The notes beneath the pieces were generated by a model that was not told the origin of the DNA, searched no databases, and worked only from the letters and a program-made list of their open reading frames with translations. This document shows, piece by piece, positions 30,633 to 63,998 of a DNA stretch of 64,000 nucleotides. Origin of the DNA: Styela clava (taxonomy: Eukaryota); contig NC_135262.1 of NCBI RefSeq assembly GCF_964204865.1, forward strand, positions 4,402,001-4,466,000, in the 5' to 3' direction. Position 1 is the stretch's first letter. The number at the start of each line of letters is the position of its first letter. The position numbers were made by a program, and so were the translations under genes.

Positions 30633-32279
30633 ATGTCAAAGGTTTCAGATGATGAGTTTGATTTGGATATTGATGTAAATGAACACAATGCATTGATGAT
30701 GGGAAAAATGCATAGTATGAAAAAAGACGGACAACATTCTGACCTCGTCATCAAAGTAGTAAGTGAAGAGTTCCTGGTTCACAGGAACATGATGTCAGCG
30801 GGTTCTGATTATTTTAATGCGATGTTGTCACATGATAACTTGGAAAGCAACACTGGAATTGTTGATATGAAGGAAGTCGATGTCAATTCTGTGAAAGTTT
30901 GCATTGATTATATTTACACTGGAAAAGCTTCAATTACTTTGGAGAAAAGTGAACGACTACTCCATGTTGCAGCTTTGATGCAATTATCAGTACTTTGTGA
31001 TAAGATAGCTGTGTTTCTTGAAGCCAAGTTGGATGTGAAATCACTTCTCATCATCAAACAAATTGCTTCTATGTTTGAAATTCAAATATTAAAAACAGCA
31101 TGTGATGAATTTGCATTGACTAATATGGGAGCAATTTCACAGGAAGAATACTTCAATGAATTGGATGTGGAATTCATCTCTTTCATGGTTGGATCGAAAA
31201 ATTTAGATTATTCTGAGGATTCTAAACTTGCTGTTCTTCTGCAATGGATCAAAGCTGATATTGGCCAAAGAAAGAAGCTTCTTGTTGAAATGATAAATCT
31301 GATAAACCTGAACAATGTTTCATCTCGATATGCAACATTCTTAGTGGAAAATGAAAGCCTGTGTGTTGAATCACCTTTAATCATGAAATTATTGTTTCTC
31401 AAAATGACAGAGAAATTTGGTGTTAAAGGAGAATCTGCAAAAATCCCCGCTAATGCATCTGAATTCAATACTTTTGCTGTTTTTGACAAAACTTCGACGA
31501 AAATCAAAACATTCCATTCAGAACAAAATGAATGGCAAGAACTAAAAAATCTGCATGATAGTATGGTAGACAGCCTTTACACTGCAGTCATGGTGAAGGA
31601 TTTCATCTATGTTTTTATTGATGATAATCGTTCTGTATATCGTATTAATATTTCTGAACCAGATTCAACTTGGACGAGATTGTCTGATCAGCAATGTGAC
31701 CATGAAATGTATTTACAAGCAGCAGTTTGTAATGAATTCATTTATCTGTGTGGCAATGGTACATTGGAGGAGTACATTATCAGCAAAAATATGTGGAGTG
31801 TGGTGAAAAGTGAAAAGATTGTGCTAATGTATTGTACATTAGTTGGATTCCAGGAATCACTTTATGTGATTGGAGGTTACTCAGGTCGTAGTTTAGCATC
31901 TGTGAATCGATATTTACAACAATCCACTTGGTCTTCAGTCAAAGCAATGAATGTTCCTAGGCAGATTCCTGCCGCTACTGTTTATAGAAATCGAATATTT
32001 GTGGCAGGCGGATATGGTCTTGGATCCTTATCAAGTTCAGAGTTCTATGATGCACAAACAGATTCTTGGACAAATTTAGCCTCTATGACTGTTCCTCGGT
32101 ATGGTTTTAGCCTTTGCACTGTTGGTGATGAATTATTTGCAATAGGAAGTGATAAAGTCGGATCACAATTAGTTGAGAAATACAGTTTTGAATCAAATCG
32201 TTGGGAGCATCATATTAATATTCCAGAAAATATGAATATTGCTCCACTTGCCAGTCTGGCATATAAACTTCCGTCTTAG
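30633..32279 (+). CDS. BTB-BACK-Kelch (KLHL-like) protein K1, intronless CDS
   Basis: BTB (SDLVIKV..EEFLVH...SDYF.AM...IDYIYTG...LL.VA.LMQL..L), BACK, and Kelch repeats (YVIGG, FVAGG, W...A.M..PR). Confidence 0.95.
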   Translation: MSKVSDDEFDLDIDVNEHNALMMGKMHSMKKDGQHSDLVIKVVSEEFLVHRNMMSAGSDYFNAMLSHDNLESNTGIVDMKEVDVNSVKVCIDYIYTGKASITLEKSERLLHVAALMQLSVLCDKIAVFLEAKLDVKSLLIIKQIASMFEIQILKTACDEFALTNMGAISQEEYFNELDVEFISFMVGSKNLDYSEDSKLAVLLQWIKADIGQRKKLLVEMINLINLNNVSSRYATFLVENESLCVESPLIMKLLFLKMTEKFGVKGESAKIPANASEFNTFAVFDKTSTKIKTFHSEQNEWQELKNLHDSMVDSLYTAVMVKDFIYVFIDDNRSVYRINISEPDSTWTRLSDQQCDHEMYLQAAVCNEFIYLCGNGTLEEYIISKNMWSVVKSEKIVLMYCTLVGFQESLYVIGGYSGRSLASVNRYLQQSTWSSVKAMNVPRQIPAATVYRNRIFVAGGYGLGSLSSSEFYDAQTDSWTNLASMTVPRYGFSLCTVGDELFAIGSDKVGSQLVEKYSFESNRWEHHINIPENMNIAPLASLAYKLPS

Positions 32280-33588
32280 TAAATGCAATATGTATTGCAT
32301 CAGCATTAAGAATATAGGAAACAGGCCACTATGAGTTCCATTTGATTTTTAAGTGTTTCAATTTGATTAAATTATCTATTTTGATATTATATGTAGCAAA
32401 CAATGAATGATTATTATAGTACAATTTTCTGTAATTAAGACAAATTTTATTGATATGCTCATATATATGATCTTATTATTATGTTTGAAAAACTTAAACA
32501 AGTTGAATCATGTATTAATATTTCGTTTTATTCTATAGTTAGTCTTCATATGTATGTGTAGTTCTATATACTATATCGTTTAAATTTGGTTTGTTCCCTG
32601 AATGCATTTTTATTCAAAACATAACTTGATGGTGTGAAACTGGCCACTGTTTTTTACACCTGGTTTGCTTTTTCTCTCAAAAAGGAAGGCTGTTGAAGAA
32701 ATGAGCTTTGATAAATACTTTTCCAAGCGGATTTTAATTTAGGGAAAAGGCTTTCATCCTTTATGAGCCTTGCTTGCGGTTGAATTCAAAGGATGTATGC
32801 AGTACGTATTGATTTACTGTTTATTATCACAAATATTGTACTACGTTTTTCATTTGTTACATTTATCTTTACATATTTTTCGGCTTATTGTCTAAAAATC
32901 CCCTTGGCTTACTGCATTCAATATTGGTTTATCGCATCTTCCTTCACACTGAAATGCATTTTTTTCACCTGGTTCTATTCTGTAAAAATATTCTGTCTTC
33001 GACATGTGTAAAAATAAACTACTGATGACTGGTGGTTACAAAAGCTTAATTTGGAAGTGAGAGGGGACATTACACCCATTACAGTTTTAAGAAAAGTTCA
33101 TGATACAGTGGTCACTTGCTTTTCTATTGTCCTGTATAACATTGTGAGCATATATATATGATCGAACTATGGTAGCATGACAGTTTAACATCTTAGATTC
33201 AAATCCCATGGCCACCACCTAAATTAGTACGACTTTTATATCACAACCTAGATGATGTAAATACCATTTGTTAGCTTTTTATACTTCGCTTTCTTATATT
33301 CTTCATTTAATAATTCTTATACTTAGCTAATTCGTTGAATCAGACATGTGTTGTAGCATCGATGGCAATAAAATTCTGAGTCACCAACAAAATTTGTTAT
33401 TGTGCATTCCCAGATAAGGTTTTTACAATTTTAAATAATTGTGTTAAGAAGTTGGAATAAAAATTAATCAGGAATTTCTTCAAATATATTGTATGAAATG
33501 GTATGCATGTTACATTTTACTGCATTTAATATTGTGTTGTATTAAATTTAGTTTTATATCTAGTGAGTTGTCTAAATATTTGATTCTA

Positions 33589-33720
33589 ATGGAATTTGAT
33601 CTTGGTATCGATGAAATTGAACACAAGAACATGATGATGAAACGTGATGATTTGAAAAAGAAGAATCGCCATTCTGAAAAGAAGAATCTCACAATCAAAG
33701 TAGGAAATGAAGAGTTTCTG
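33589..33720 (+). pseudogene. Truncated 5' fragment of a diverged BTB-Kelch gene
   Basis: MEFDLGIDEIEHKNMMMK...HS...LTIKVGNEEFL aligns with the K1-K6 N-terminus, then fuses to GST intron sequence. Confidence 0.8.
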
Positions 33721-33931: not shown

Positions 33932-34419
33932 GTACATGTTTGAAGATCTTGATCGAATATCCCAATACTATTATGTTCCGTTCCAACTTCTGAAAAACAT
34001 AGAGAAGGATTTCTTTGCGAAAGGTTCTGTTAAAGCTCAGCGTCTGTTGACTTATGTACAGGAGGAATCACCGGAACTATTGAACGGAATTTCAGATGAG
34101 ATTTTCAAAAGAATCTGGGTTGATAATGTTGACATATCTGAGAATAAAAGCTTACAAGAAGCGTGTGAAGCAGCTGGATTGTCCTCAATCTTCCAATGCT
34201 TTGAATGAAATAAATCATCAATCTGTCAAGGAAGGGCTGAAGAAAGCTACTTCATATGCTATTGAGTGCGGAGTGTTTGGCACTCCTACCTATATTTTAC
34301 ACAGAAATGGAAAGAAGGACATGTTGTTTGGAACTGATAGAATCTTCCTTCTTGCTCATTATTTGAATGAGCCTTGGCCAGTATTCCCATGTGATGAATG
34401 TGAAAGAAAAATAAACTGA
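33932..34419 (+). pseudogene. GST-kappa exon-2 duplicate 2
   Basis: Acceptor CAG changed to CAA. 5-bp deletion near 34187 causes a frameshift. Confidence 0.9.
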
Positions 34420-35591: not shown

Positions 35592-37088
35592 ATGAGACCT
35601 AGCCTGGAATTTTAAAATGATTTTAATGCAAGCCCTCCCTTTAAAAGAAGGCCTCGTCGATAGTGGGAATTTTTTTGATCTAATCGATAACAAGAAATCT
35701 CTTCTACACAATTTACATGATTAATCTAAAACATGGGAGCGGGAAAAAGGTTCAATGACCTGACTAATCTATGTTCAGCAGTTTTTTTCTAACAAAAACG
35801 TGTTATCGGTTTTCATATTTTGTATATTTGAAAATAATTAAAAGACACCCTCCAAAAATAAGCCCTGGTATTTATTTTTTAAGGAAAATTGAATAAAGAC
35901 CTTGTCTTATTTTTGGGGAAACACGACATGCTTCTTGTATTATATTATTTTGACTTTGTTGCACACCCTTTTTGTGCACTAATGTTCTCATAGAAAATTT
36001 CTTTTAAATGTTAAAATTGTAATCTGAGCATTTTTGTATTATTATTCATTTTATATTGCTCCCATATCATGTAAGATTATTGCATGCTTTGTCAGTGGCC
36101 ACTACATTTGGATAAGTATTTTATTTCAAGTTTCATTCCAAGCGAAATTCCAATCAAACAGGTTCGAGAAACCCCCTTGCAATTGATTATATTTATTATC
36201 ATAAAAGATGCCAATCGAAAAAATGTGAAATAACGATTTGACGCGAAACACTCGAAGATCACTCAACATTATTGAAACACACTTATTGTATAATTATATT
36301 ATACCTGTGAATTTGATTATATTCAAACAATATGCATATAAGAATATTGACAACTCATGGACTGTACTGGGAACCTTATTTAAAAATCACTGTTCTTAAT
36401 CAATGTCACAGATATGTGTTATAAACCACCTTGCACCTGCGAAGTAAGAGATTCTAACCTAAAAACTTGCAGTTTATCAGTAGTGCGATGGAAAGCTTGT
36501 TACGAACTTAACTATTAGTAGTGCTGTCCAAGCGAAATGAATATTCGAAATTGATTCTCAAATTTTTTGAATCAAATCGAATAAAGTGGAAAAACAAATT
36601 GACTACCTTTGCACATCAGTTTTCACTGGGCAAGCGGCAGTGCATCCTGCTTATGCGACTCTCGCCTTTCACACAACTGTTTACCCGATATTTATCTCCC
36701 CTTTCATTTTGTGTTAAAAAATGCCCGGTGGCATGTTATTAGCAATTTCATGCATGGTTATAACTGAAAAGTTATTTTGACAAACCGATTTGAGAAAAAT
36801 TTTCATTTTTAGACAGCCCTACCTATTAACCAGTCAATTTAATTAGGTATATTTTATAAACATGCACGGCTTCACATTCCTCTGGTATATCCACAATCAG
36901 TGGTACCCTAATCCTGAAATTTGTAGTTTCAATTAGAATCAGAATTTTCATGAAATGCTGTAAATTAAAATTCCTGACAACTATCAATATAAATGAATTT
37001 CAATATGTTTTCACCTAATTGCTAAACTTCTCCAGGTTGCATGGTTATATTTTAGTGAACATAAGTTAAATACAGTAATACCTTGACA

Positions 37089-38738
37089 ATGGCTAAGGTT
37101 TCGGATAAAGAGTTTGATCTGGATATTGATGTAAATGAACACAATGCATTAATGATGGGAAAATTGCATAGTATGAAAAAAGATGGTCAACATTCCGACC
37201 TCGTCATCAAAGTAGGAAGTGAGGAGTTCCTGGTTCACAAGAACATGATGTCAGCGGGTTCTGATTATTTCGATGCGATGTTGTCACATGATAACTTGGA
37301 AACCAACACAGGAATTGTTCAAATGCAAGTTGTTGATGTGGAATCGGTAAAGATTTGCATTGATTACATTTACACTGGAAAAGCTTCAATTACTTTGGAA
37401 AAAAGTGAACAACTACTCCATGTTGCAACTTTGATGCAATTATCAGTACTTTGTGATAAGATAGCTGAGTTTCTCAAAGCAAAGTTGGATGTGAAATCAC
37501 TTCTCATCATCAAACAAATCGCTTCTATGTTTGAAATTCAAACATTAAAAACAGCATGTGATGATTTTGCATTGTCTAATATGGGAGCAATTTCACAGGA
37601 AGAATACTTCAATGAATTGGATGTAGAATTCATCTCCTTCATGGTTGGATCGAAAAATTTATCTTATTCTGAGGATTCTAAACTTGCTGTTCTTCTGCAG
37701 TGGATCAAAGGTGATATTGACCAACGAAGAAAACTTCTGGTTGAAATGATAAATCTGATAAACCTGAATAATGTTTCTTATCGATATGCAACATTCTTAG
37801 TGGAAAATGAAAGCCTGTGTGTTGAATTACCTGTAATCTTAAAATTATTGTTTCTCAAAATGGCTGAGAAGTCTGGTGTTAAAGGAGCATCTGCAGAAAT
37901 TCCCACCAATGCACCTGAATTCAATGCATTTGCAGTTTTTGACAAGACTTCGAGAAAAATCAAAACATTCCGGCCAGAAAAAAAAGAATGGCAGGATCTA
38001 AAAAAACTGCATGATGGTATGGTAAATAGCTATTACACTGCAGTCATGGTGAAGGATTTCATCTATGTTTTTATGGAGAATCGTTCAGTATATCGTATTA
38101 ATATTTCTGGACCAGATTCAACTTGGAATAAAATAGCTGATTACCAATTTGAACATGGCCAGTTTTTGCGAGCAGAATTTTGTAATGAATTCATTTATCT
38201 TTTCGGCATGAAAACATTAGAGGGGTATGATATCAGCAAAAATGTGTGGGGCCTGGTAAAAACAGAAAAAATGACACTATTCAACTGTACATTAGCTGGA
38301 TTCCAGCAATCAATTTACATACTAGGAGGTTCTAATAATGGTAGTTTATCATCAGTGAATCGATATTCACTGCCATCCACTTGGTCTTCATGCAAAGCCA
38401 TGAATGTTCCTCGGGAGCTTCCTGCTGCTACAGTTAATGGGAATCGAATATTTGTGGCAGGCGGATTTAATAATATCTACGGGTCATTATCTAGTTCAGA
38501 GTTTTATGATCTACAAACAGACTGTTGGACAAATTTAGCCTCAATGACAGTTCCTCGGTGTTATTTTCGCCTTTGCACTGTTGGTAATGAATTATTTGCA
38601 ATTGGGGGTGAAAAAGGCCGGTCAAAATCGGTTGAGAAATACAATTTTGAGTCAAGTCATTGGGAGAATCTTATAAATTTTCCAGAAAATATGAATATTG
38701 CTCCACTTGCCAGTCTGGCATATAAACTTCCACCATAG
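37089..38738 (+). CDS. BTB-BACK-Kelch protein K2
   Basis: Intact paralog of K1. Confidence 0.95.
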   Translation: MAKVSDKEFDLDIDVNEHNALMMGKLHSMKKDGQHSDLVIKVGSEEFLVHKNMMSAGSDYFDAMLSHDNLETNTGIVQMQVVDVESVKICIDYIYTGKASITLEKSEQLLHVATLMQLSVLCDKIAEFLKAKLDVKSLLIIKQIASMFEIQTLKTACDDFALSNMGAISQEEYFNELDVEFISFMVGSKNLSYSEDSKLAVLLQWIKGDIDQRRKLLVEMINLINLNNVSYRYATFLVENESLCVELPVILKLLFLKMAEKSGVKGASAEIPTNAPEFNAFAVFDKTSRKIKTFRPEKKEWQDLKKLHDGMVNSYYTAVMVKDFIYVFMENRSVYRINISGPDSTWNKIADYQFEHGQFLRAEFCNEFIYLFGMKTLEGYDISKNVWGLVKTEKMTLFNCTLAGFQQSIYILGGSNNGSLSSVNRYSLPSTWSSCKAMNVPRELPAATVNGNRIFVAGGFNNIYGSLSSSEFYDLQTDCWTNLASMTVPRCYFRLCTVGNELFAIGGEKGRSKSVEKYNFESSHWENLINFPENMNIAPLASLAYKLPP

Positions 38739-38739
38739 T

Positions 38740-40446
38740 CAGTGGCGCAGCCAGGGGGGGGTTTCGGGGTCGAAACCCCCCCCCCCCCCCCCCCCTTTGA
38801 ATTTTCCGAAAAGTGAAAAAGTTGCCGATAACACGCGCAATTGCCTTCTGCTGAAATCGCCGTTCGTTTTCATCAACGCGGCATTTTATTTATTCCGTGA
38901 ACGCCCTTTACATTGGTGTTTATTCTCTTTAAATCACAAATTTGTGCTGCGGGAACAATGGAACTATTTTATTTTTGTACCCGCACGGAAATGTGAAAAC
39001 TGAAAAAGCGTGCAATTGCCTTCTGCTAAAATCGCCCATGTTTTCATCAGCGTGTTATTTGGGCCGTAAACGCCCTTACGTCGGTTTTTATTCTATCTAA
39101 ATCATAAATCTGTGCCACGATAAACATGATAATTATTTTATTTTTGTACTTTGCACGGAATTGTGAATTCGTGAGTTATTATACGTTCATCGGTGGCGAG
39201 GTTCTAAAGACAAAAGAAGGAGTAAAACCGCGATCTAAATTTGATTGAAATTATAAAGTACTGAAAATAAAACCGTAAACAATATAAGTTTTGTTGAGTC
39301 CCGCGACAGTCTAAAAACGCTTTTCTAGTCGCAAAATCGCAAAATTTCTTGTGCCTATGGCGCACATTATGTTTGGTCACCGTTTAGGAACATACCGTCA
39401 CTAAAATCGAAACACGGTTAATTGTGGGTGGGATTTGCCTTTTATCCATTACTTTAAAATTGTCGTAGAAAATTTTCGTGTTATCATTAAACAAGGTTGA
39501 AAACGTGATTTTTTTCCCGGTTTGTGATGATATATAAGATAATTAATCCGAAGTATATTCATCAATTTTTATTGTACTAAAATAAATTTTACTCCGTGAG
39601 AATTCACAGCAGATTTAGGGATTTTTCAGGAGGTTTTATCTTTAAAAATAATCGGAGTGTCAGCATTGCGATTGAACGGAGTCAATGTTACAAGCACATC
39701 TCAAATTTGTCGAATTTGCAGAATAGAAAAAATACGGATCAAAACAATATATGATAGGCGACGGGCAGTTACCACAAATTTTTATTTTTATGTCGGCAAA
39801 TGGCCGAGGTATTTTAAAATTGTGAATTGTAAAAAATTGTTTTGTTTTGTCGACGCAAACGCTGGTTAAATTGAAGACAATTAAATTAATAAAGCAAGAC
39901 ATTTTAAATATGCCCTTATCGGTCACGAATTGATTACTTTGCACAACAGAAAAATCATTTTTCGTTGTAAACGTCAGCTCTTTTAACAAGTGGCGTAATC
40001 GCGGCGATGAATATGTATTTTTGATTTAACCATATACTTCATACGCATTTTCATTGTGCGAAATAAAATTGTACTTTTCGGGATTTTATACCAGTTATTG
40101 AGATTTTTCTAACGGCCGTAACGAGTTGGCAAGATTCCAAAAATACGTATTAAAATTAAATACACCGTTTATCCTCATATTTTACTTATTTCAGAGAACT
40201 AATGTTTTAGTTTTGACGTAAGAAGAAGCAACCGCGAGTTACGTTGGACACAATTAAACTAATATATAAAGACATTTTAGAATTTTGTAGTTGTCAGAGA
40301 TTGAATATTTCACGCGACAAGAATAATCATTATACGCTGAAAAGACGTCCCTTTAACGAGCGCGTAATTCGAAGACTGTTACAGACCGCAATGGGAAGTT
40401 ATGATTATGAAACCCCCCCCTTTTGAAAATCCTGGCTGCGCGCCTG
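38740..40446. mobile_element. Non-autonomous hAT element at the K2 stop codon
   Basis: TIRs CAGTGGCGCAGCCAGG / CCTGGCTGCGCGCCTG. Perfect 8-bp TSD ACCATAGT. Confidence 0.93.
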
Positions 40447-41678
40447 ACCATAGTCAATGCTATATTTATATCATAAGCATTAAGAATATATGAAACAGGC
40501 CACTATGAGTTCCACTTGATTTTTAAGCGTTTCAATTTGATTAAATTATCTATTTTGATAATATACATAGACAATGAATGATTATTATAGGGCAATTTTC
40601 TGTATTTGAGCCGAATTTTATTGATATGCTAGTTTGAAAAACTCAAACAAGATAAATCATGTATTAATATGTAGTTTTACTCTATAGTCTTCATATCTAT
40701 GTGTAGTTCTATACGCTGTATCGTTTAAATTTGGTTTGTTCCATGAATTTTATTTTTTATTCAAAACATAACTTGATGGTGTGGAACTGGCCACTGTTCT
40801 ATATTCTCTTTGCTGACTGAATAGCTGAAGGAAGAGTTCTATGAAAAATTCACCGAGGTTTAATTTTAGAATGAAACTTCTTATCTTTTAAGATTTGTTT
40901 GTGGCTGAACTCAGAGGGATATGTACTGATTAATTTCTACTAGTATAAATATTGTTCGTTTTTTATTTATTGCAATTATTTTATATATTTTGCAGCTTAT
41001 TCGTATTTGGCCAAGTTTCTATTAATCTCAATCTATGTGAGGAATTTAGGTCTCAGTGCTAGTAAACCATATCCTATAATTGTTACCTTTAGTATTTATA
41101 TTTTTCTTTAGCGTAGTGTTGGGTGCAAAAGCTTAATTTGGCAGTGAGGAGGGACATTACGTCCATAATAGTTGGAGAAAATCATCTCACAATATATAAC
41201 ATTGTTCTGTGTAAAATTGTGAGAACTTGTGTTCGAACTGAGTTAGCATCAGATATTAATATCTTAGATACAAACCCCATGGCCACCTCACCGAGTACGA
41301 CTTGTATATCACAACCTAGATGATGTAACTTTCTTTTGTTAACTCATATATACTTTGCTTTCCTATATTCTTCATTTGATAATACTCATGCCTGGCTATA
41401 TTGATCAATCAGACATGTCTTGTAGCATTGAGCAAGCACTGTTATTGGCAAAAAATTTGTAGTCACCAACAGAATTTGTTATTGTGCATCCCCAGTGCAT
41501 TCTCAAAGGAAATTTTTATAATTTTATATAATTGATTTAAGAAATTGCGGTAGGTAATCAGAAATTTCTTCAAATATACTGTATAAAATACTATGCATGG
41601 AACATTTTACTGCATTTAATAACTTGTTGTATTATATTTAGTTTTAAATCTAGTGAGTTGTCTAAATATTTGATTATA

Positions 41679-41803
41679 ATGGAATTTGACTCTGGTATTA
41701 ATGAAAATGAACACAAAAACATAATGATGACGAAATTTGATGATTTGAGAAAGAAGAATACCATTCTGATCTCACAATCAAAGTATGAAGCAGAGAGTTA
41801 CTG
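41679..41803 (+). pseudogene. Truncated BTB-Kelch 5' fragment
   Basis: MEFDSGINENEHKNIMMTKFDDLRKK, then frameshifted. Confidence 0.8.
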
Positions 41804-42030
41804 CAAAGTTTTCAATCTCAAATTTTGGGTTTCTCTGAAATAGAGTCAGAATTTTCGCCAGCATGGAAATGTATTCGAAGTCACAATCTTTGTTAACCCA
41901 AATTGGATTTGCAAAATCAATAGGTGTTTGGAAGTGGAGTCAGTTGAAAGTTTTCCAGGACCACATAACTCTTCTAGTCCTATCAATAAATATCTAGAAT
42001 GAATATTTAACAATTATCATTCTTTCTCAA

Positions 42031-42505
42031 GTAAATGTTTTTAGATCTTGACCGAATATCTGAATACTATCGCGTTCCGTTCCAACTTCTGAAAAACACA
42101 GAGGAGGATTTCTTTGCGAAAGGTTCGGTTAAAGCTCAGCGTTTGTTGACTTTTGTACAGGAGGAATCACCGGAACATTTAAACGGAATTTCAGATGAGA
42201 TTTACAAAAGAATCTGGGTTGATAATGTTGACATTTCTGAATATAGAAGTTTACAAGAAGCGTGTGAAGCAGCTGGATTGTCCTCCATAGAATCTTCCAA
42301 TGCTTTGGATGGAATAAATCATCAATCTGTTAAGGAAGGGCTGAAGAAAGCTACTTCATATGCTATTGAGTGCAGAGTGTTTGGCACTCCTACCTATATT
42401 TTACACAAAAATGGAATATGGGACATGTTATTTGGTACTGATAGAATCTTCCTTCTTGCTCATTATTTGAATGAGCCTTGGCCGGTGTTCCCAAATGATG
42501 AGTAA
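42031..42505 (+). pseudogene. GST-kappa exon-2 duplicate 3
   Basis: Acceptor CAG changed to CAA and first codon TAC changed to TAA. The 156-aa frame from the internal ATG is still open but lacks the catalytic N-terminus. Confidence 0.8.
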
Positions 42506-44283
42506 TGACAGAAAATAACTGATTCCTCCATCAAGTCTATTGATAAATATGCATGAGGGGCCTTCTATAAAATAAATAAGCAATCAGTTAATATTGTGCA
42601 CAACTCAATGTTGACGTAGCTACATAAAAATAAAGCTGCCCAAAATCAAACAATTTCCCCTTCTTCTATACGATTATCCACATGACAAACTACAAATGTC
42701 TTTTGTCACCTCTTTACCAATTAGCTCTGCCTCTGTTTTGATAGTTGTAAAACACAATATCTCATTATTACTGTTGTTTAAATATACAACTCTTGTTGGA
42801 GGTGCCTGAACCACGACCAGTTTTTAGATCTGACCTATTGAAGATTTATATGCTTCTTGGATTATATTATTTTGACTTTCTAGCACACCTTTAGACTGCA
42901 CCAAGTGGTGGCTGTAAGCTTGTAACCTCATGTTTTCATAAAAATTTGTATAAAATGTTAAAATTTTGATTGGGGTAATTTTTAAATTGTTCATTTTACA
43001 TTGCCACAAAATATCATCAGAAATTTGATTGTGGTGATAGTGGCCGTTACATCTCGATAAATATTTTTATCCAAGTTTCATTTGTCGGGTAGTATAATCA
43101 TGTTTTTGTGGTCATTTGTTCGGAACAAGGCTTTGGTTAAAGTATCGCACAGATATATACCGTACATGTATATGTTGAACAAATGAATCAGTGTTGTTAT
43201 AATAGAAGAGGTTCCTTGATATTGACTTATTACACGAGGAACTTCCGTGCAATTGGTTATTTTCATTATCATAAAATATGCCAATCAAATGTGAAACAAC
43301 AATTTGACGCAGAACAACTGAAGTCACTCTACATTAGTGAATCACATTTATTATATGATAATATTATACCTTATATCTGTGATCTGTGTATTTGATTATG
43401 TTTGAACAATATGCAACTAGGAATTTTGCCATTTCGATTGGAATAGGGACATGCGGAACCCCTGGACTTACTGGGGGAACCTAGGTGGAAATCACTGTTT
43501 TAGATTAATGTTACAGATATGGGTAATGAACCACCTTGCACTTGTAAAGTATCAAGCGATCCTGTCTCTCATAATAGTCTTCTAAGAGATTCTAACTTGC
43601 GAACCTGCAGGTTTCCAGCAGTGCAATGGCCAGTTTGTTCCAAACTTACCTCTTAGTAGGGCTGTCCAAGTGAACCGAATATTCGAAATCAAATTGCATA
43701 TTATTCAAATCGTTTTAAGACTAATTTTAGGAATCGTTAAAGTAGGTAGGCTACATTAAGCGGAAAAAGCCTATTGACTACTTTTGCACAGCGTTTTTTA
43801 CCTGGCAAGTGGCGGCGCAGCGTGCAGCAGAGGTTTCCAGTTATTTCTTTCTCCCTCATTTTGTGTTGGAAAAGAATGCCCGTGGCATGACATTAGCTAT
43901 TTCATGCGTGGTCATAACTGAAAAGTTATTATCGGTTCGATATTAAAAACATCACAAAAATATTCGAAATTCGTTCGAATTGGAAAAAAAATTCGTCCCT
44001 ATTAGCAAGTCAATTCAATTATATCATATTTTATATACATACAAGACATTACATAAATGCCTCTTGTCTACCCACAATTAGTGGAACCTTAATTCTGAAT
44101 TCTGCTTCAATTAAAATCAAAATTTTTATGAAATGATGTAAATAAAAATTCCTGACAATTATCAATATAAGCCTAACCTGTTGAATTCCAGTAATATTTT
44201 TTAACCAATTGCTGAACTTCTCCAGGTTGCATCACTTACATGGTCATTTTTTGTGAATATAAGTTAGATACAGTAATAACTTG

Positions 44284-50239: not shown

Positions 50240-51886
50240 ATGTCAAAGGTTTCAGATGATGAGTTTGATTTGGATATTGATGTAAATGAACACAATGCAT
50301 TGATGATGGGAAAAATGCATAGTATGAAAAAAGACGGACAACATTCTGACCTCGTCATCAAAGTAGTAAGTGAAGAGTTCCTGGTTCACAAGAACATGAT
50401 GTCAGCGGGTTCTGATTATTTTAATGCGATGTTGTCACATGATAACTTGGAAAGCAACACTGGAATTGTTGATATGAAGGAAGTCGATGTCAATTCTGTG
50501 AAAGTTTGCATTGATTATATTTACACTGGAAAAGCTTCAATTACTTTGGAGAAAAGTGAACGACTACTCCATGTTGCAGCTTTGATGCAATTATCAGTAC
50601 TTTGTGATAAGATAGCTGTGTTTCTTGAAGCCAAGTTGGATGTGAAATCACTTCTCATCATCAAACAAATTGCTTCTATGTTTGAAATTCAAATATTAAA
50701 AACAGCATGTGATGAATTTGCATTGACTAATATGGGAGCAATTTCACAGGAAGAATACTTCAATGAATTGGATGTGGAATTCATCTCTTTCATGGTTGGA
50801 TCGAAAAATTTAGCTTATTCTGAGGATTCTAAACTTGCTGTTCTTCTGCAATGGATCAAAGCTGATATTGGCCAAAGAAAGAAGCTTCTGGTTGAAATGA
50901 TAAATCTGATAAACCTGAACAATGTTTCATCTCGATATGCAACATTCTTAGTGGAAAATGAAAGCCTGTGTGTTGAATCACCTTTAATCATGAAATTATT
51001 GTTTCTCAAAATGACAGAGAAATTTGGTGTTAAAGGAGAATCTGCAAAAATCCCCGCTAATGCATCTGAATTCAATACTTTTGCTGTTTTTGACAAAACT
51101 TCGACGAAAATCAAAACATTCCATTCAGAACAAAATGAATGGCAAGAACTAAAAAATCTGCATGATAGTATGGTAGACAGCCTTTACACTGCAGTCATGG
51201 TGAAGGATTTCATCTATGTTTTTATTGATGATAATCGTTCTGTATATCGTATTAATATTTCTGAACCAGATTCAACTTGGACGAGATTGTCTGATCAGCA
51301 ATGTGACCATGACATGTATTTACAAGCAGCAGTTTGTAATGAATTCATTTATCTGTGTGGCAATGGTACATTGGAGGAGTACATTATCAGCAAAAATATG
51401 TGGAGTGTGGTGAAAAGTGAAAAGATTGTGCTAATGTATTGTACATTAGTTGGATTCCAGGAATCACTTTATGTGATTGGAGGTTACTCAGGTCGTAGTT
51501 TAGCATCTGTGAATCGATATTTACAACAATCCACTTGGTCTTCAGTCAAAGCAATGAATGTTCCTAGGCAGATTCCTGCCGCTACTGTTTATAGAAATCG
51601 AATATTTGTGGCAGGCGGATATGGTCTTGGATCCTTATCAAGTTCAGAGTTCTATGATGCACAAACAGATTCTTGGACAAATTTAGCCTCTATGACTGTT
51701 CCTCGGTATGGTTTTAGCCTTTGCACTGTTGGTGATGAATTATTTGCAATAGGAAGTGATAAAGTCGGATCACAATTAGTTGAGAAATACAGTTTTGAAT
51801 CAAATCGTTGGGAGCATCATATTAATATTCCAGAAAATATGAATATTGCTCCACTTGCCAGTCTGGCATATAAACTTCCGTCTTAG
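50240..51886 (+). CDS. BTB-BACK-Kelch protein K4 (near-identical to K1)
   Basis: I see only three amino-acid differences from K1 (R/K, D/A, E/D). Confidence 0.95.
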   Translation: MSKVSDDEFDLDIDVNEHNALMMGKMHSMKKDGQHSDLVIKVVSEEFLVHKNMMSAGSDYFNAMLSHDNLESNTGIVDMKEVDVNSVKVCIDYIYTGKASITLEKSERLLHVAALMQLSVLCDKIAVFLEAKLDVKSLLIIKQIASMFEIQILKTACDEFALTNMGAISQEEYFNELDVEFISFMVGSKNLAYSEDSKLAVLLQWIKADIGQRKKLLVEMINLINLNNVSSRYATFLVENESLCVESPLIMKLLFLKMTEKFGVKGESAKIPANASEFNTFAVFDKTSTKIKTFHSEQNEWQELKNLHDSMVDSLYTAVMVKDFIYVFIDDNRSVYRINISEPDSTWTRLSDQQCDHDMYLQAAVCNEFIYLCGNGTLEEYIISKNMWSVVKSEKIVLMYCTLVGFQESLYVIGGYSGRSLASVNRYLQQSTWSSVKAMNVPRQIPAATVYRNRIFVAGGYGLGSLSSSEFYDAQTDSWTNLASMTVPRYGFSLCTVGDELFAIGSDKVGSQLVEKYSFESNRWEHHINIPENMNIAPLASLAYKLPS

Positions 51887-55231: not shown

Positions 55232-56881
55232 ATGGCAAAGGTTTCGGATAATGAGTTTGATTTGGATATTGATGTAAATGAACACAATGCATTAATGATG
55301 GGTAAATTGCATAGTATGAAAAAAGATGGACAACATTCTGACCTCGTCATCAAAGTAGGAAGTGAGGAGTTCTTGGTTCACAAGAACATGATGTCAGCGG
55401 GTTCTGATTATTTTGATGCGATGTTGTCACATGATAACTTGGAGACCAACACAGGAATTGTTAAAATGCAAGATGTTGATGTGGAATCAGTAAAGGTTTG
55501 CATTGATTACATTTACACTGGAAAAGCTTCAATTACTTTGGAAAAAAGTGAACAACTACTCCATGTTGCAACTTTGATGCAGTTATCAGTACTTTGTGAT
55601 AAGATAGCCGAGTTTCTCAAAGCTAAGTTGGACATGAAAACACTTCCCTTTATCAAACAAACTGCTTCTATGTTTGAAATCCAAACAATAAAAACAGCAT
55701 GTGATGATTTTGCATTGTCTAATATGGGAGCAATTTCTCAGGAAGAATACTTCAATGAATTGGATGTAGAATTCATCTCCTTCATGGTTGGATCGAAAAA
55801 TTTATCTTATTCTGAGGATTCTAAACTTGCTGTTCTTCTGCAGTGGATCAAAGGTGATATTGACCAACGAAGAAAACTTCTGGTTGAAATGATAAATCTG
55901 ATAAACCTGAATAATGTTTCTTATCGATATGCAACATTCTTAGTGGAAAATGAAAGCCTGTGTGTTGAATTACCTGTAATCTTAAAATTATTGTTTCTCA
56001 AAATGGCTGAGAAGTCTGGTGTTAAAGGAGCATCTGCAGAAATTCCCACCAATGCACCTGAATTCAATGCATTTGCAGTTTTTGACAAGACTTCGAGAAA
56101 AATCAAAACATTCCGGCCAGAAAAAAAAGAATGGCAGGATCTAAAAAAACTGCATGATGGTATGGTAAATAGCTATTACACTGCAGTCATGGTGAAGGAT
56201 TTCATCTATGTTTTTATGGAGAATCGTTCAGTATATCGTATTAATATTTCTGGACCAGATTCAACTTGGAATAAAATAGCTGATTACCAATTTGAACATG
56301 GCCAGTTTTTGCGAGCAGAATTTTGTAATGAATTCATTTATCTTTTCGGCATGAAAACATTGGAGGGGTATGATATCAGCAAAAATGTGTGGGGCCTGGT
56401 AGAAACAGAAAAAAATACACTATTCAACTGTACATTAGCTGGATTCCAGCAATCAATTTACATACTAGGAGGTTCTAATAATGGTAGTTTATCATCAGTG
56501 AATCGATATTCACTGCCATCCACTTGGTCTTCATGCAAAGCCATGAATGTTCCTCGGGAGCTTCCTGCTGCTACAGTTAATGGGAATCGAATATTTGTGG
56601 CAGGCGGATTTAATAATATCTACGGGTCATTATCTAGTTCAGAGTTTTGTGATCTACAAACAGACTGTTGGACAAATTTAGCCTCAATGACAGTTCCTCG
56701 GTATTATTTTGGCCTTTGCACTGTTGGTAATGAATTATTTGCAATTGGAGGTGAAAAAGGCCGGTCAAAATCGGTTGAAAAATACAATTTTGAGTCAAGT
56801 CATTGGGAGAATCTTATAAATTTTCCAGAAAATATGAATATTGCTCCACCTGCCAGTCTGGCATATAAACTTCCACCATAG
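55232..56881 (+). CDS. BTB-BACK-Kelch protein K5 (chimeric: K3-like 5' part, K2-like 3' part)
   Basis: Intact ORF. See the chimera finding. Confidence 0.95.
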   Translation: MAKVSDNEFDLDIDVNEHNALMMGKLHSMKKDGQHSDLVIKVGSEEFLVHKNMMSAGSDYFDAMLSHDNLETNTGIVKMQDVDVESVKVCIDYIYTGKASITLEKSEQLLHVATLMQLSVLCDKIAEFLKAKLDMKTLPFIKQTASMFEIQTIKTACDDFALSNMGAISQEEYFNELDVEFISFMVGSKNLSYSEDSKLAVLLQWIKGDIDQRRKLLVEMINLINLNNVSYRYATFLVENESLCVELPVILKLLFLKMAEKSGVKGASAEIPTNAPEFNAFAVFDKTSRKIKTFRPEKKEWQDLKKLHDGMVNSYYTAVMVKDFIYVFMENRSVYRINISGPDSTWNKIADYQFEHGQFLRAEFCNEFIYLFGMKTLEGYDISKNVWGLVETEKNTLFNCTLAGFQQSIYILGGSNNGSLSSVNRYSLPSTWSSCKAMNVPRELPAATVNGNRIFVAGGFNNIYGSLSSSEFCDLQTDCWTNLASMTVPRYYFGLCTVGNELFAIGGEKGRSKSVEKYNFESSHWENLINFPENMNIAPPASLAYKLPP

Positions 56882-56882
56882 T

Positions 56883-60160: not shown

Positions 60161-60643
60161 GTAAATGTTTTTAGATCTTGACCGAATATCTGAATACTAT
60201 CGCGTTCCGTTCCAACTTCTGAAAAACACAGAGGAGGATTTCTTTGCGAAAGGTTCGGTTAAAGCTCAGCGTTTGTTGACTTACGTACAGAAAGAATCAC
60301 CTGAACATTTGAATGGACTTTTAGATGAGATTTTCAAAAGAATCTGGGTCGACAATGTTGACATTTCTGAAAATAAAAGCTTACGAGAAGCGTGTGAAGC
60401 AGCTGGATTGTCCTCCATAGAATCTTCCAATGCTTTGAATGAAATAAATCATCAATCTGTCAAGGAAGAACTGAAGAAAGGTACTTCATATGCTATTGAG
60501 TGCGAGGTGTTTGGCACTGCTACATATATATTACACAAAAATGGAAGATGGAATGGAAGGACATGTTGTTTGGTACTGATAGAATATTCCTCCTTGCTCA
60601 TTATTTGAATGAGCCATGGCCAGTGTTCCCAAATAATGAATGA
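60161..60643 (+). pseudogene. GST-kappa exon-2 duplicate 5
   Basis: Acceptor lost, TAC changed to TAA, the conserved GTP proline changed to Ala, and a frameshifting insertion near 60545-60560. Confidence 0.9.
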
Positions 60644-62354: not shown

Positions 62355-63998
62355 ATGGCAAAGGTTTCGGATAAAGAGTTTGATTTGGATATTGATGTAA
62401 ATGAACACAATGCATTGATGATGGAAAAAATGCATAGTATGAGGAAAGACGGACAACATTCTGACCTCGTCATCAAAGTAGGAAGTGAGGAGTTCCTGGT
62501 TCACAAGAACATGATGTCAGCGGGTTCTGATTATTTCGATGCGATGTTGTCACATGATAACTTGGAGACCAACACAGGAATTGTTGACATGCAAGATGTT
62601 GATGTGGAATCAGTAAAGGTTTGCATTGATTACATTTACACTGGAAAAGCTTCAATTACCTTGGAAAGAAGTGAACAACTACTCCATGTTGCAACTTTGA
62701 TGCAGTTGTCAGTACTTTGTGATAAGATAGCTGAGTTCCTCAAAGCTAAGTTGGATGTGAAATCATTTCTCATCATCAAACAAATTGCTTCTATGTTTGA
62801 AATTCAAACATTAATAACAGCTTGTGATGATTTTGCATTGTCTAATATGGGAGCAATTTCTCAGGAAGAATGCTTCAATGAATTGGATGTGGAATTCATC
62901 TCTTTCATGGTTGGATCGAAAAATTTATCTTATTCTGAGGATTCTAAACTTGCTGTTCTTCTGCAGTGGATCAAAGCTGATATTGACCAACGAAGGAAGC
63001 TTCTGGTTGAAATGATAAATTTAATAAACCTGAACAATGTTTCTTATCGATATGCAACATTCTTAGTGGAAAATGAAAGACTGTGTTCTGAATCACCTGT
63101 GATTTTGAAATTATTGTTTCTCAAAATGGCGGAGAAGTTTGGCGTTGAAGGAGCATCTGCAGAAATCCCCGCTAGTGCATCTGAATTCAATGCTTTTGCT
63201 GTTTTTGACAAGACTTCCAAAACAATAAATTCATTCTATCCAGAAAAAAGTGAATGGCAGGAATTAAAAAATCTGCATGATAGTATGATAAACAGCAATT
63301 ACACTGCTGTCATGGTGAAGGATTTTATCTATGTTTTTATTGGTAATTGTTCAGTATATCGAATTAATATTTCTGAACCAGATTCAACTTGGAATAAAAT
63401 TGCTGATCATCAATGTCACCATGGTCAATATTTACGAGCAGCAGTTTGTGATGGATTCATTTATTTGTGTGACAAGGAAACATTGGACGAGTACAATATC
63501 AGTCAAAACATGTGGACGGTGGTAAAAAGTGAAAAAATTACGCTATACAATTGTACTTTAGTTGGACTGCAGGAATCACTTTATGTAATAGGAGGTTTTT
63601 TAAATGGTAGTTTATCCTCAGTGAGTCGATATTCACAACAATCTTCTTGGTCTTCAGTCAAAGCGATGAATGTTCACAGGCAAAATCCTGCTGCTACTGT
63701 TTATGGAAATCGAATATTTGTAGCAGGCGGATTTGATGGTGTATATTTATCTAGTACAGAGTTCTATAATCCACAAACAGATTCTTGGACAAATTTATCA
63801 TCCATGACTGTTCCTCGGGGTGGTTTTTGTCTTTATGCTGTAGAAAACAAACTATTTGCAATTGGAGGTAATAGACAGGGATCAAAATCAATTGAGAAAT
63901 ACAATTTTGAATCAAGTCGTTGGGAGCATCTTATGAATTTTCCAGATAATATGGATATTGCTCCACGAGCCAGTCTGGCATTTAAACTTCCACCATAG
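62355..63998 (+). CDS. BTB-BACK-Kelch protein K6
   Basis: Intact paralog ending TAG at 63996-63998. Confidence 0.95.
   Translation: MAKVSDKEFDLDIDVNEHNALMMEKMHSMRKDGQHSDLVIKVGSEEFLVHKNMMSAGSDYFDAMLSHDNLETNTGIVDMQDVDVESVKVCIDYIYTGKASITLERSEQLLHVATLMQLSVLCDKIAEFLKAKLDVKSFLIIKQIASMFEIQTLITACDDFALSNMGAISQEECFNELDVEFISFMVGSKNLSYSEDSKLAVLLQWIKADIDQRRKLLVEMINLINLNNVSYRYATFLVENERLCSESPVILKLLFLKMAEKFGVEGASAEIPASASEFNAFAVFDKTSKTINSFYPEKSEWQELKNLHDSMINSNYTAVMVKDFIYVFIGNCSVYRINISEPDSTWNKIADHQCHHGQYLRAAVCDGFIYLCDKETLDEYNISQNMWTVVKSEKITLYNCTLVGLQESLYVIGGFLNGSLSSVSRYSQQSSWSSVKAMNVHRQNPAATVYGNRIFVAGGFDGVYLSSTEFYNPQTDSWTNLSSMTVPRGGFCLYAVENKLFAIGGNRQGSKSIEKYNFESSRWEHLMNFPDNMDIAPRASLAFKLPP

What the first reader, a model, noticed from the sequence alone, without database searches (positions are those of the whole stretch)
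30633..63998. Tandem repertoire of BTB-BACK-Kelch adaptors with constant BTB and variable propeller loops
Seen: six intact intronless paralogs. The first ~130 aa are almost the same in all of them. The Kelch region differs sharply, with indels, at specific loops: MVDSLY/MVNSYY/MVDEDY/MINSNY; HEMYLQ/HGQFLR/HGKYLR/HGQYLR; GGYSGRSL/GGSNNGSL/GGYLNGSL/GGFLNGSL; RQIP/RELP/RQVP/RQNP; GGYGLGSL/GGFNNIYGSL/GGWKNGEI/GGFDGVYL; GSDKVGSQ/GGEKGRSK/GGICNKGSK/GGNRQGSK. Established: BTB-BACK binds Cullin-3, and the loops after GG and after 'PR' form the substrate-binding face of Kelch propellers. Nematode F-box/MATH-BTB families show the same constant-adaptor, variable-recognition pattern, proposed to reflect pathogen conflict. 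Inference: this is a lineage-specific, diversifying CRL3 recognition system, possibly for intracellular immunity or allorecognition. The ORFs stay open while neighbouring duplicated exons decay, which argues for selection.
Basis: partly seen in the sequence, partly recalled or inferred. Interest (0 to 1): 0.85.

Follow-up and report, generated by a model that had tools for sequence, protein, structure and literature searches.

The report
Diversifying BTB-Kelch array in sea squirt
Six intact single-exon BTB-BACK-Kelch genes (the type that recruits substrates to cullin-3 ubiquitin ligases) form a tandem array in the sea squirt Styela clava; the front end stays constant, a few residues on the predicted substrate-binding face change faster than neutral, and this is one of several such arrays in the genome.

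Summary
Six uninterrupted ORFs of 547-549 aa, all BTB+BACK+Kelch, lie at the stated places. They represent four diverged types, because K1/K4 and K2/K5 are recent block duplicates. The organism is Styela clava. The array continues past the window with two more close copies and two diverged ones.

BTB is under strong purifying selection (dN/dS 0.06-0.23). Exchange between copies adds some homogenisation: K5 is a mosaic. Kelch dN/dS is 0.4-0.6 overall.

My own codon site models find a 2-3% class with omega of about 4-5 (p 0.0006-0.03). The three best-supported sites all lie in predicted top-face loops.

In this array, however, amino-acid variability is spread over the whole propeller. Bottom loops vary as much as top loops.

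Two sister arrays give much stronger, face-specific signals: C17b with 8 genes and C1 with 22 genes. The scan had already reported the C1 array on other DNA (s1-817512), and my independent analysis agrees with it.

Cul3 binding is inferred by homology only. The canonical phi-x-E contact reads N-L-E here. Expression could not be tested. An immune or allorecognition role has no direct evidence.

The parts
30633..32279 (+). K1: intact single-exon BTB-BACK-Kelch gene (548 aa)
   Evidence: ORF; Pfam BTB/BACK/Kelch; 99% identical to K4
37089..38738 (+). K2: intact BTB-BACK-Kelch gene (549 aa). BTB is about residues 29-134, BACK 143-235, six-blade propeller 278-547.
   Evidence: AF2 model pLDDT 87.7; Foldseek hits to KBTBD2-CUL3, KLHL22-CUL3 and the KLHL12/KLHL3/KEAP1 Kelch domains
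44284..45930 (+). K3: intact BTB-BACK-Kelch gene (547-548 aa; two adjacent ATGs)
50240..51886 (+). K4: recent duplicate of K1 (dS 0.003)
55232..56881 (+). K5: mosaic gene. The BTB end is nearest K3 and the BACK-Kelch part is nearly identical to K2.
   Evidence: K2-K5 dS is 0.19 in BTB and 0.018 in Kelch; K3-K5 BTB dS is 0.067; sliding identity; block profile
62355..63998 (+). K6: intact BTB-BACK-Kelch gene (547 aa), ending 2 nt before the window edge
   Evidence: L004
27690..33095 (+). Recent duplicated block A (partner 47317-52695). Identity is 99.5-100% in the core around the CDS and falls to 89% at the edges.
36795..42848 (+). Recent duplicated block B (partner 54918-61008). Identity is 98-100% from codon ~170 of the gene through 3 kb of downstream non-coding DNA, and 87-95% over the BTB end.
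27877..28344 (+). DSBA-like thioredoxin (PF01323, GST-kappa-like) exon carried in the repeat unit. It is intact here and at 42035-42502. It is broken at 33936-34398 (frameshift), 47524-47977 (stop + frameshift) and 60165-60640 (frameshift).
33592..33720 (+). Remnant of a Kelch-gene 5' end (residues 8-48, 55% identity). A second remnant at 47158-47280 carries a stop.
   Evidence: tblastn

Best explanation
These are functional, lineage-specific KLHL-type genes of Styela clava. They grew by tandem duplication of a unit of about 5-7 kb: Kelch gene, about 500 nt of conserved upstream sequence, and a DSBA-like exon. The array is still being reshuffled by unequal exchange and gene conversion. The N-terminal BTB-BACK module is kept nearly constant, mainly by purifying selection and secondarily by exchange between copies. 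It is predicted to dimerise and, by homology, to dock on cullin-3. The C-terminal six-blade Kelch propeller diverges. A small set of residues in the BC and DA loops, which form the substrate-binding face in solved KLHL/KEAP1 structures, evolves with omega>1. The most likely outcome is a repertoire of E3-ligase adaptors with different substrate specificities. The dimer interface is shared, so mixed dimers between paralogs are conceivable. Shown here: gene integrity, domain architecture, the selection pattern and the mosaicism. Inferred: Cul3 docking, substrate binding at the top face, and any biological target.
For: ORFs and domains. Species and paralog landscape: the own-genome search gave 78 matches, of which at least 53 are full-length and uninterrupted; RefSeq names are. 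Each array is monophyletic with a long stem and a star-like crown. Pairwise NG86 dN/dS is 0.06-0.23 for BTB, 0.17-0.45 for BACK and 0.38-0.62 for Kelch. K1/K4 versus the other copies has equal dS in BTB (0.30-0.33) and Kelch (0.31-0.33), yet BTB dN is only 0.06, which indicates purifying selection without conversion. Codon ML on the Kelch region of six lineages: M1a/M2a 2dlnL 9.75 (p 0.008), M7/M8 14.7 (p 0.0006), M8a/M8 10.9 (p 0.001), with 2-3% of sites at omega 4-5. Sites with posterior >0.9 are K2 residues 398 (3DA), 466 (5BC) and 510 (6BC). With partition-specific trees the signal persists (summed M8a/M8 10.8, p 0.0045), and BTB shows none. In 16 null simulations on a two-tree mosaic the largest 2dlnL was 2.5. 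The AF2 model defines the loops. Sister arrays: C17b M7/M8 32.6, with 13 of 15 selected sites in top loops (p 3e-5); C1 M8a/M8 218, with 14 of 19 (p 2e-4). Tree-free top-loop omega is 1.00 (C1), 0.80 (C17b) and 0.62 (window). Selected positions recur across arrays near K2 residues 398, 415/416, 466 and 510. A protein from another S. clava assembly (P0003) differs from K6 at 10 Kelch residues; 9 are in top loops and none in bottom loops. BTB-BACK aligns to Cul3-bound KLHL11, KLHL3 and KBTBD2. The predicted BTB-BACK homodimer scored 0.75 against a best control of 0.00. That mark was reached by 21 of 30 proteins solved as pairs of one chain and 0 of 23 solved as single chains. The runs agree in >=95% of contacts and partner pLDDT is >=85. 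The pass may come from memory of solved KLHL dimers. All 6 Kelch ORFs are intact, whereas 3 of 5 neighbouring DSBA-like exon copies are broken.
Against: In this array the face-specific contrast is weak. Top-loop dN is 0.246 against 0.199 for bottom loops. The fraction of variable residues is 0.60 against 0.65. Top-loop enrichment of selected sites is 5 of 7, p 0.051. Only about four to six independent lineages are available. Recombination is present, and it can inflate site-model tests beyond what my simple two-tree control covers. The codon-model code is my own, not PAML or HyPhy. The Cul3-contact motif phi-x-E of KLHL3, KLHL11 and KBTBD2 aligns to N-L-E here. No expression data could be obtained. 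Loop classes come from a predicted structure's secondary-structure string, not from 3D distances.
Confidence: 0.68

Rival explanations
1. Neutral birth-and-death of redundant duplicates. On this reading the Kelch domain is simply under relaxed constraint, BTB looks constant because gene conversion homogenises the 5' end, and the omega>1 class is a recombination artefact.
For: Kelch-wide dN/dS is 0.4-0.6, not above 1. Variability in this array is spread over strands and bottom loops. The mosaic K5, a collapsed BTB tree for six of eight copies, and patches of high identity inside the Kelch region show frequent exchange.
Against: K1/K4 shows BTB conservation with undiminished dS. At fourfold sites the BTB-versus-Kelch contrast is only about 1.6-fold and is significant (p<0.05) in only one of 15 pairs (K3-K6, p 0.04). 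LRTs survive partition-specific trees, and null mosaic simulations do not reproduce them. Selected sites fall on top loops and recur at homologous positions in three independent arrays. All ORFs are intact while neighbouring exons decay.
Confidence: 0.2
2. The proteins do not work with cullin-3. They would be BTB-dimerised Kelch scaffolds, for example cytoskeleton- or protein-binding, and no ubiquitin ligase would be involved.
For: The phi residue of the phi-x-E Cul3 contact is Asn in the whole Styela family (N-[LV]-E). No Cul3 interaction was tested.
Against: The Glu of the motif is invariant and a hydrophobic residue sits next to it in a low-confidence loop (pLDDT <50 at residues 69-71), so a register shift is possible. 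BTB and the 3-box/BACK region align over their full length to three adaptors solved in complex with Cul3. BTB is the most constrained part of the protein, as expected for a conserved partner interface.
Confidence: 0.1
3. Allorecognition or self-incompatibility determinants, one of the first reader's suggested roles.
For: The array content apparently differs between two S. clava assemblies: P0002 and P0003 have no identical counterpart among K1-K8.
Against: The sequence shows no signal peptide or hydrophobic segment, and the architecture is that of a cytosolic adaptor. S. clava is a solitary ascidian. There is no linkage or expression evidence.
Confidence: 0.04
4. Copies K4 and K5 are assembly artefacts: an alternative haplotype collapsed in tandem rather than true paralogs.
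For: The K1/K4 core is 99.5-100% identical and the K2/K5 block is 98-100% identical over 4.4 kb.
Against: Identity falls gradually to 85-89% at the block edges. K5 carries a different BTB end from K2. The third members of the units (K3, K6) differ by 19% in protein. This pattern fits exchange within a real array better than a duplicated haplotig.
Confidence: 0.06

Closest known systems
Vertebrate KLHL / KBTBD Cul3 substrate adaptors (KEAP1, KLHL3, KLHL11, KLHL12, KLHL22, KBTBD2)
   Same: The BTB-BACK-six-blade-Kelch architecture is the same. The full-length fold matches KBTBD2-CUL3 and KLHL22-CUL3, and the Kelch domain matches KLHL12, KLHL3 and KEAP1 at TM about 0.8. BTB-BACK aligns to KLHL11 and KLHL3. 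A BTB dimer is predicted.
   Different: The coding sequence is a single exon. The genes sit in tandem arrays of near-identical BTB ends. Identity to any solved human Kelch domain is only 19-24%. There is no stable one-to-one orthology: RefSeq names the paralogs KLHL12, 24, 8, 26 and others inconsistently. The phi-x-E motif reads N-L-E.
Nematode BATH (MATH-BTB) and F-box adaptor expansions under positive selection (Thomas 2006, Genome Res; cited from my own knowledge)
   Same: A constant cullin-docking module is paired with a variable substrate-recognition module. The expansions are lineage-specific and tandem. Positive selection concentrates on the binding surface.
   Different: The recognition domain here is a Kelch propeller C-terminal to BTB, not an N-terminal MATH domain or an FBA/FTH domain. 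The host is a chordate. In neither system is a pathogen link demonstrated.
Teleost finTRIM / TRIM5-like B30.2 expansions (PMC2657112)
   Same: A large lineage-specific E3-related family is diversified by duplication, with positive selection on loops of the recognition domain.
   Different: That family has a RING-B-box-coiled-coil scaffold with its own E3 activity, rather than a cullin adaptor. finTRIMs have documented virus and interferon induction. Nothing comparable is known here.
Tunicate and amphioxus Klhl local duplications (Coppola et al. 2020, PMC7517041)
   Same: That paper reports 32 Klhl genes in Ciona robusta, 37 in amphioxus and 42 in human, with a 'tremendous increase' of the Klhl9/13 subfamily in tunicates arising by local duplication.
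   Different: Styela was not sampled in that study. The count here is at least 53 uninterrupted single-exon copies as a lower bound. Selection analysis was not part of that paper. Whether these arrays belong to the Klhl9/13 clade was not tested.
The 286-kb C1 array of the same genome (earlier scan finding s1-817512)
   Same: It is the same gene superfamily with the same constant-BTB / variable-top-face pattern. My own analysis of 22 of its genes agrees with the earlier report.
   Different: It is a different chromosome-scale contig and a separate monophyletic clade, about 33% identical to the window genes. Its crown is younger, with a far stronger and more face-specific signal: top/bottom dN ratio 4.3 against 1.2 here.

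Membership tests
BTB-BACK-Kelch (KLHL/KBTBD) family | N-terminal BTB/POZ domain | tested here: met
   PF00651 scores 65-77 bits in all six copies against a cut-off of 20.5
BTB-BACK-Kelch (KLHL/KBTBD) family | BACK domain following BTB | tested here: met
   PF07707 scores 34-40 bits against a cut-off of 20.9. The region aligns to KLHL11 and KLHL3 BTB-BACK crystal constructs.
BTB-BACK-Kelch (KLHL/KBTBD) family | C-terminal six-bladed Kelch beta-propeller | tested here: met
   The AF2 model (pLDDT 87.7) has 24 strands in six four-stranded blades, with C-terminal strand closure. Foldseek TM is about 0.8 to the KLHL12, KLHL3 and KEAP1 Kelch domains.
BTB-BACK-Kelch (KLHL/KBTBD) family | BTB-mediated homodimer | tested here: met
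   This is a prediction only. The score was 0.75 against a best control of 0.00. That mark was reached by 21 of 30 proteins solved as pairs of one chain and 0 of 23 solved as single chains. The runs agree in >=95% of contacts and partner pLDDT is >=85. The pass may reflect memory of solved KLHL dimers.
Cullin-3 substrate adaptors (CRL3) | phi-x-E motif in the BTB alpha3-beta4 loop that contacts Cul3 (definition recalled from my own knowledge of the KLHL3/KLHL11/SPOP-Cul3 structures) | tested here: inconclusive
   M-S-E of KLHL3, F-S-E of KLHL11 and L-S-E of KBTBD2 align to N69-L70-E71 of K2. The Glu is invariant and the N-[LV]-E pattern holds in all 26 Styela relatives examined. The loop has pLDDT <50.
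Cullin-3 substrate adaptors (CRL3) | Physical binding to Cul3 and substrate ubiquitination | not testable with these tools
   Styela Cul3 is a spliced gene, and a joined model could not be handed to the complex predictor.
Diversifying adaptor repertoires (BATH / F-box / finTRIM type) | Lineage-specific tandem expansion | tested here: met
   The array has 8 close and 2 diverged copies. Three arrays are each monophyletic at 100% support. Named relatives above 30% identity all come from S. clava.
Diversifying adaptor repertoires (BATH / F-box / finTRIM type) | Site class with omega>1 in the recognition domain, and none in the docking domain | tested here: met
   Window Kelch region: p 0.0006-0.008, and p 0.0045-0.03 with partition-specific trees. 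BTB: p 0.4-0.7. Sister arrays give 2dlnL of 23-291.
Diversifying adaptor repertoires (BATH / F-box / finTRIM type) | Selected sites map to the substrate-binding surface | tested here: inconclusive
   In the window array 5 of 7 selected sites are in top loops (p 0.051), and overall top-loop and bottom-loop variability are equal. The pattern is clear in the sister arrays (p 3e-5 and 2e-4) and in the P0003-K6 comparison, where 9 of 10 differences are in top loops.
Diversifying adaptor repertoires (BATH / F-box / finTRIM type) | Expression, and induction by infection or another conflict | not testable with these tools
Orthologs of a named vertebrate KLHL (KLHL12, KLHL24 and others, as in RefSeq names) | Consistent one-to-one relationship to one vertebrate subfamily | tested here: inconclusive
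   Automatic names differ among near-identical paralogs. The best solved matches are spread over KEAP1, KLHL12, KLHL17, KLHL20 and KLHL22. No vertebrate-inclusive tree was built.

The most novel reading that the evidence does not exclude
The arrays together would form an individually variable intracellular recognition repertoire in a chordate that lacks adaptive immunity. Dozens of Cul3 adaptors would share one dimerisation and docking module, so that homo- and heterodimers combine different propellers. Their top-face loops would be driven by an arms race with viruses, transposon proteins or other selfish elements. Unequal exchange would continually generate new haplotypes. This would be a Kelch-based analogue of TRIM5/finTRIM restriction factors.
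Probability: 0.22. Interest if true: 0.85.

Novelty: new variant of a known kind. Interest (0 to 1): 0.6.

Why it matters
Tunicates are the closest living relatives of vertebrates, but they lack antibodies and T-cell receptors. How they generate recognition diversity is an open question. A large tandem family of ubiquitin-ligase adaptors with a frozen docking module and a positively selected binding face would be a new candidate system for intracellular non-self or conflict recognition in chordates. It would also be a natural library of Kelch propeller specificities. For this particular window the value is corroborative. It shows that the pattern seen in the large C1 array recurs in an independent and older array, and that it decays towards general divergence with age. 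It also documents the exchange events (mosaic K5, graded blocks) that keep the arrays dynamic.

Tried and rejected
Expression and the origin of unnamed Logan relatives (P0054, P0058 and others) therefore remain unknown.

2. Literature. Eight searches found no paper on Kelch or BTB expansion in Styela. The only related statement found concerns the Ciona and amphioxus Klhl repertoire (PMC7517041).

3. Cul3 docking by complex prediction. This was not attempted, because Styela Cul3 is spliced and joined exon models may not be submitted.

4. Gene conversion as the sole cause of BTB constancy. I rejected this. K1/K4 has undiminished BTB dS, and the fourfold-site contrasts are weak.

5. 'Variability confined to top-face loops' in this array. 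I rejected this. The bottom-loop variable fraction is 0.65 against 0.60 for top loops.

6. Mapping sites onto 3D coordinates. Model coordinates are not exposed, so loop classes were derived from the DSSP string instead.

7. Residue-level alignment to KEAP1 contact residues. This was not obtained, because designed SAKe proteins outrank KEAP1 in the alignment output.

8. A viral or horizontal origin was not examined.

Full report
WHAT IS THERE

The window holds six uninterrupted ORFs of about 1.65 kb on the + strand between 30.6 and 64.0 kb. With the first ATG and the stop included, the coordinates are:
- K1 30633-32279
- K2 37089-38738
- K3 44284/44287-45930
- K4 50240-51886
- K5 55232-56881
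- K6 62355-63998

Each copy scores above Pfam's gathering thresholds for BTB (65-77 bits), BACK (34-40 bits) and Kelch motifs. The N-terminal 135 residues are 87-99% identical between copies. The propeller is about 66-76% identical between types.

There are four diverged types in the window, not six. K1/K4 differ at four codons (dS 0.003) and K2/K5 are 97% identical. These pairs lie in two recent duplicated blocks, 27690-33095 ~ 47317-52695 and 36795-42848 ~ 54918-61008. Block identity is 99.5-100% in the core and decays to 85-89% at the edges.

ORGANISM AND GENOMIC SETTING

The nearest database proteins are RefSeq models of the ascidian Styela clava. They are named inconsistently as kelch-like protein 12, 24, 8, 26 and so on. 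The window is G000:C17:4402001-4466000 of a 377-Mb assembly.

The array continues beyond the window. Two more close copies lie downstream (K7 at C17:4468768, K8 at C17:4472952), followed by two diverged copies.

The own-genome search returned 78 matches. By my count at least 53 are full-length and uninterrupted. They sit mostly in arrays on C17 (a second array at 4.68-4.77 Mb, 'C17b'), C1 (23.02-23.31 Mb), C18 and C10. This is a lower bound, because only 79 of 570 first-look candidates were scored. For comparison, the whole Klhl repertoire was reported as 32 genes in Ciona robusta, 37 in amphioxus and 42 in human (PMC7517041).

A protein tree makes each of the three sampled arrays monophyletic at 100% support: window 8, C17b 8, C1 22. 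Each has a long stem and a star-like crown.

An exhaustive HMMER search, followed by a name look-up for ten of the full-length relatives at 31-35% identity, found only S. clava among the named ones; the rest were unnamed Logan contigs.

STRUCTURE

An AlphaFold2 model of K2 was built on 26 Styela paralogs. It has mean pLDDT 87.7. It shows a BTB domain, a helical BACK domain and a six-blade, four-strand-per-blade propeller closed by the C-terminal strand.

Foldseek matches the full-length model to KBTBD2-CUL3 and KLHL22-CUL3 adaptors. The propeller matches the KLHL12, KLHL3 and KEAP1 Kelch domains at TM about 0.8.

From the strand map I classed every propeller residue as strand, top loop (B-C and D-A) or bottom loop (A-B and C-D). 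In solved KLHL and KEAP1 complexes the B-C and D-A loops form the substrate-binding face; this is established knowledge that I recalled, not something tested here.

WHY BTB IS CONSTANT

Pairwise Nei-Gojobori dN/dS is 0.06-0.23 in BTB, 0.17-0.45 in BACK and 0.38-0.62 in Kelch.

The K1/K4 lineage has the same dS against the others in BTB (0.30-0.33) as in Kelch (0.31-0.33), yet its BTB dN is only 0.06. For that lineage, purifying selection alone explains the constancy.

Among K2, K3, K5, K6, K7 and K8 the BTB tree collapses: terminal branches are 0.001-0.036, against 0.10-0.14 in Kelch. K2-K3 are 97-99% identical in nucleotides over codons 1-120. K5 is a clear mosaic, with BTB nearest K3 and the rest nearly identical to K2.

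At fourfold-degenerate sites, however, the BTB-versus-Kelch contrast is only about 1.6-fold, and only one of 15 pairs reaches p<0.05 (K3-K6, p 0.04).

I conclude that purifying selection is the main cause of BTB constancy and that exchange between copies contributes. About 500 nt upstream of the ATG is also conserved between paralogs (82-85%). The downstream flank is barely alignable.

IS THE PROPELLER UNDER DIVERSIFYING SELECTION?

Domain-wide the answer is no, since omega is about 0.4-0.6.

I wrote a GY94/F3x4 maximum-likelihood implementation of M0, M1a, M2a, M7, M8 and M8a. I applied it to the Kelch region (277 codons) of the six independent lineages. The results were:
- M0 omega 0.40
- M1a/M2a 2dlnL 9.75 (p 0.008)
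- M7/M8 2dlnL 14.7 (p 0.0006)
- M8a/M8 2dlnL 10.9 (p 0.001)
- 2-3% of sites at omega 4-5

Sites with posterior above 0.9 are K2 residues 398 (3DA), 466 (5BC) and 510 (6BC). At posterior above 0.5, 5 of 7 sites are in top loops (p 0.051).

Splitting the propeller into halves, each with its own ML tree, keeps the signal: summed M8a/M8 is 10.8 (p 0.0045). BTB shows none (p 0.4-0.7) and BACK is marginal. Sixteen null (M1a) simulations on a two-tree mosaic, analysed on one tree, gave a maximum 2dlnL of 2.5. The code is therefore not grossly miscalibrated, and mild mosaicism does not produce the signal.

The evidence against a face-specific process in this array is that amino-acid variability is general. 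The variable fraction is 0.48 in strands, 0.60 in top loops and 0.65 in bottom loops. Top-loop dN (0.246) is only 1.2 times bottom-loop dN (0.199).

REPLICATION IN SISTER ARRAYS

The same profile recurs elsewhere in the genome: a constant first 100 or so codons and a variable remainder. C17b gives omega 0.20 (BTB codons 1-100), 0.31 (BACK) and 0.54 (Kelch). C1 gives 0.09, 0.34 and 0.71.

Site models give the following:
- C17b: M7/M8 2dlnL 32.6 (p 8e-8). All 11 M2a sites, and 13 of 15 M8 sites, lie in top loops (p 3e-5).
- C1 (22 genes, branch lengths fixed up to a scale factor): M1a/M2a 256 and M8a/M8 218. 14 of 19 selected sites lie in top loops (p 2e-4).

A tree-free class-wise estimate gives top-loop omega of 1.00 (C1), 0.80 (C17b) and 0.62 (window). 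The top/bottom dN ratios are 4.3, 1.7 and 1.2. Selected positions recur across arrays near K2 residues 398, 415/416, 466 and 510.

After I had run these analyses I found that the scan had already reported the C1 array (s1-817512). My results agree with that report.

The window array therefore looks like an older member of the same system. Its crown dS is 0.3-0.45, against about 0.1-0.2 in C1. In an older array, general divergence would have blurred the face-specific signal.

A GLIMPSE OF BETWEEN-INDIVIDUAL VARIATION

Two proteins from another S. clava assembly have no identical counterpart among K1-K8. P0003 is closest to K6, at 96% identity in the Kelch domain. Of its 10 Kelch differences, 9 are in top loops, 1 is at the strand end next to a top loop, and none is in a bottom loop. 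P0002 is closest to K8, with 16 differences in top loops, 11 in strands and none in bottom loops. I could not tell whether these are alleles or additional paralogs.

IS IT A CUL3 ADAPTOR?

This rests on homology only. BTB-BACK aligns end to end with KLHL11, KLHL3 and KBTBD2, all of which have been solved with Cul3.

The phi-x-E contact motif (M-S-E, F-S-E and L-S-E in those three) aligns to N69-L70-E71. N-[LV]-E holds across all 26 Styela relatives examined and the Glu is invariant. The loop is modelled with low confidence. This is a real deviation whose effect is unknown.

A BTB-BACK homodimer is predicted, with a score of 0.75 against a best control of 0.00. That mark was reached by 21 of 30 proteins solved as pairs of one chain and 0 of 23 solved as single chains. 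The runs agree in at least 95% of contacts and partner pLDDT is at least 85. The pass may come from memory of solved KLHL dimers.

The predicted interface residues (4-29, 50-57, 93-104, 120-128) are almost invariant among the paralogs. Mixed dimers are therefore conceivable, but this is inference.

FUNCTION

The genes are maintained: 6 of 6 ORFs here and 22 of 22 sampled in C1 are intact. By contrast, 3 of 5 copies of the co-duplicated DSBA-like exon are broken.

There is no signal peptide or hydrophobic segment, which makes a cell-surface allorecognition role unlikely.

Nothing in hand links the family to immunity.

VERDICT

This is a real, selected, lineage-specific BTB-BACK-Kelch array with a constrained docking end and a small positively selected class on the predicted binding face. 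The signal in this array is modest, part of the BTB constancy comes from exchange between copies, and the CRL3 and immune readings remain inference.

Its closest analogues are the nematode BATH and F-box expansions and the fish finTRIM expansion. Relative to these it is a new variant, built on a Kelch propeller in a tunicate. The scan has already described the phenomenon on other DNA of the same genome.

Noticed in passing
window 14870-17200 (+): An uninterrupted 776-aa ORF with two Neuralized homology repeats (PF07177, E 1e-64) and a C-terminal C3HC4 RING. It looks like a single-exon Neuralized-type E3 ligase gene, about 13 kb upstream of the array.
   Followed up: no
window 27877-28344, 33936-34398, 42035-42502, 47524-47977, 60165-60640 (+): Five copies of a DSBA-like thioredoxin (PF01323, GST-kappa-like) exon are carried along with the repeat unit. 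Two are intact and three are broken by frameshifts or a stop. I did not check whether the intact ones belong to a functional multi-exon gene.
   Followed up: partly
window 9-15 nt upstream of each ATG (e.g. 30610-30632, 37066-37088): A conserved polypyrimidine tract followed by AG lies just upstream of all six start codons. It could be the acceptor of a 5'-UTR intron or a spliced-leader trans-splice site. About 500 nt of upstream sequence is 82-85% conserved between paralogs.
   Followed up: no
window 33592-33720 and 47158-47280 (+): Short remnants of Kelch-gene 5' ends (residues 8-48, 55-59% identity, the second with a stop) sit at unit junctions.
   Followed up: partly
K2 residues 69-71 (window 37293-37301) and homologous positions in all paralogs: The Cul3-contact phi-x-E motif of solved KLHL/KBTBD adaptors reads N-[LV]-E in every Styela family member examined, including members of other arrays.
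   Followed up: partly
P0002, P0003 (proteins of another S. clava assembly): These have no identical counterpart among K1-K8 (best matches 89% to K8 and 95% to K6). That suggests the array content or alleles differ strongly between individuals.
   Followed up: partly
G000:C17:4476356-4480791 (L009, L021): Two much more diverged BTB-Kelch genes (49% and 44% identity to K2) sit at the downstream end of the same array. L021 is identical to RefSeq 'kelch-like protein 30' (P0021).
   Followed up: no
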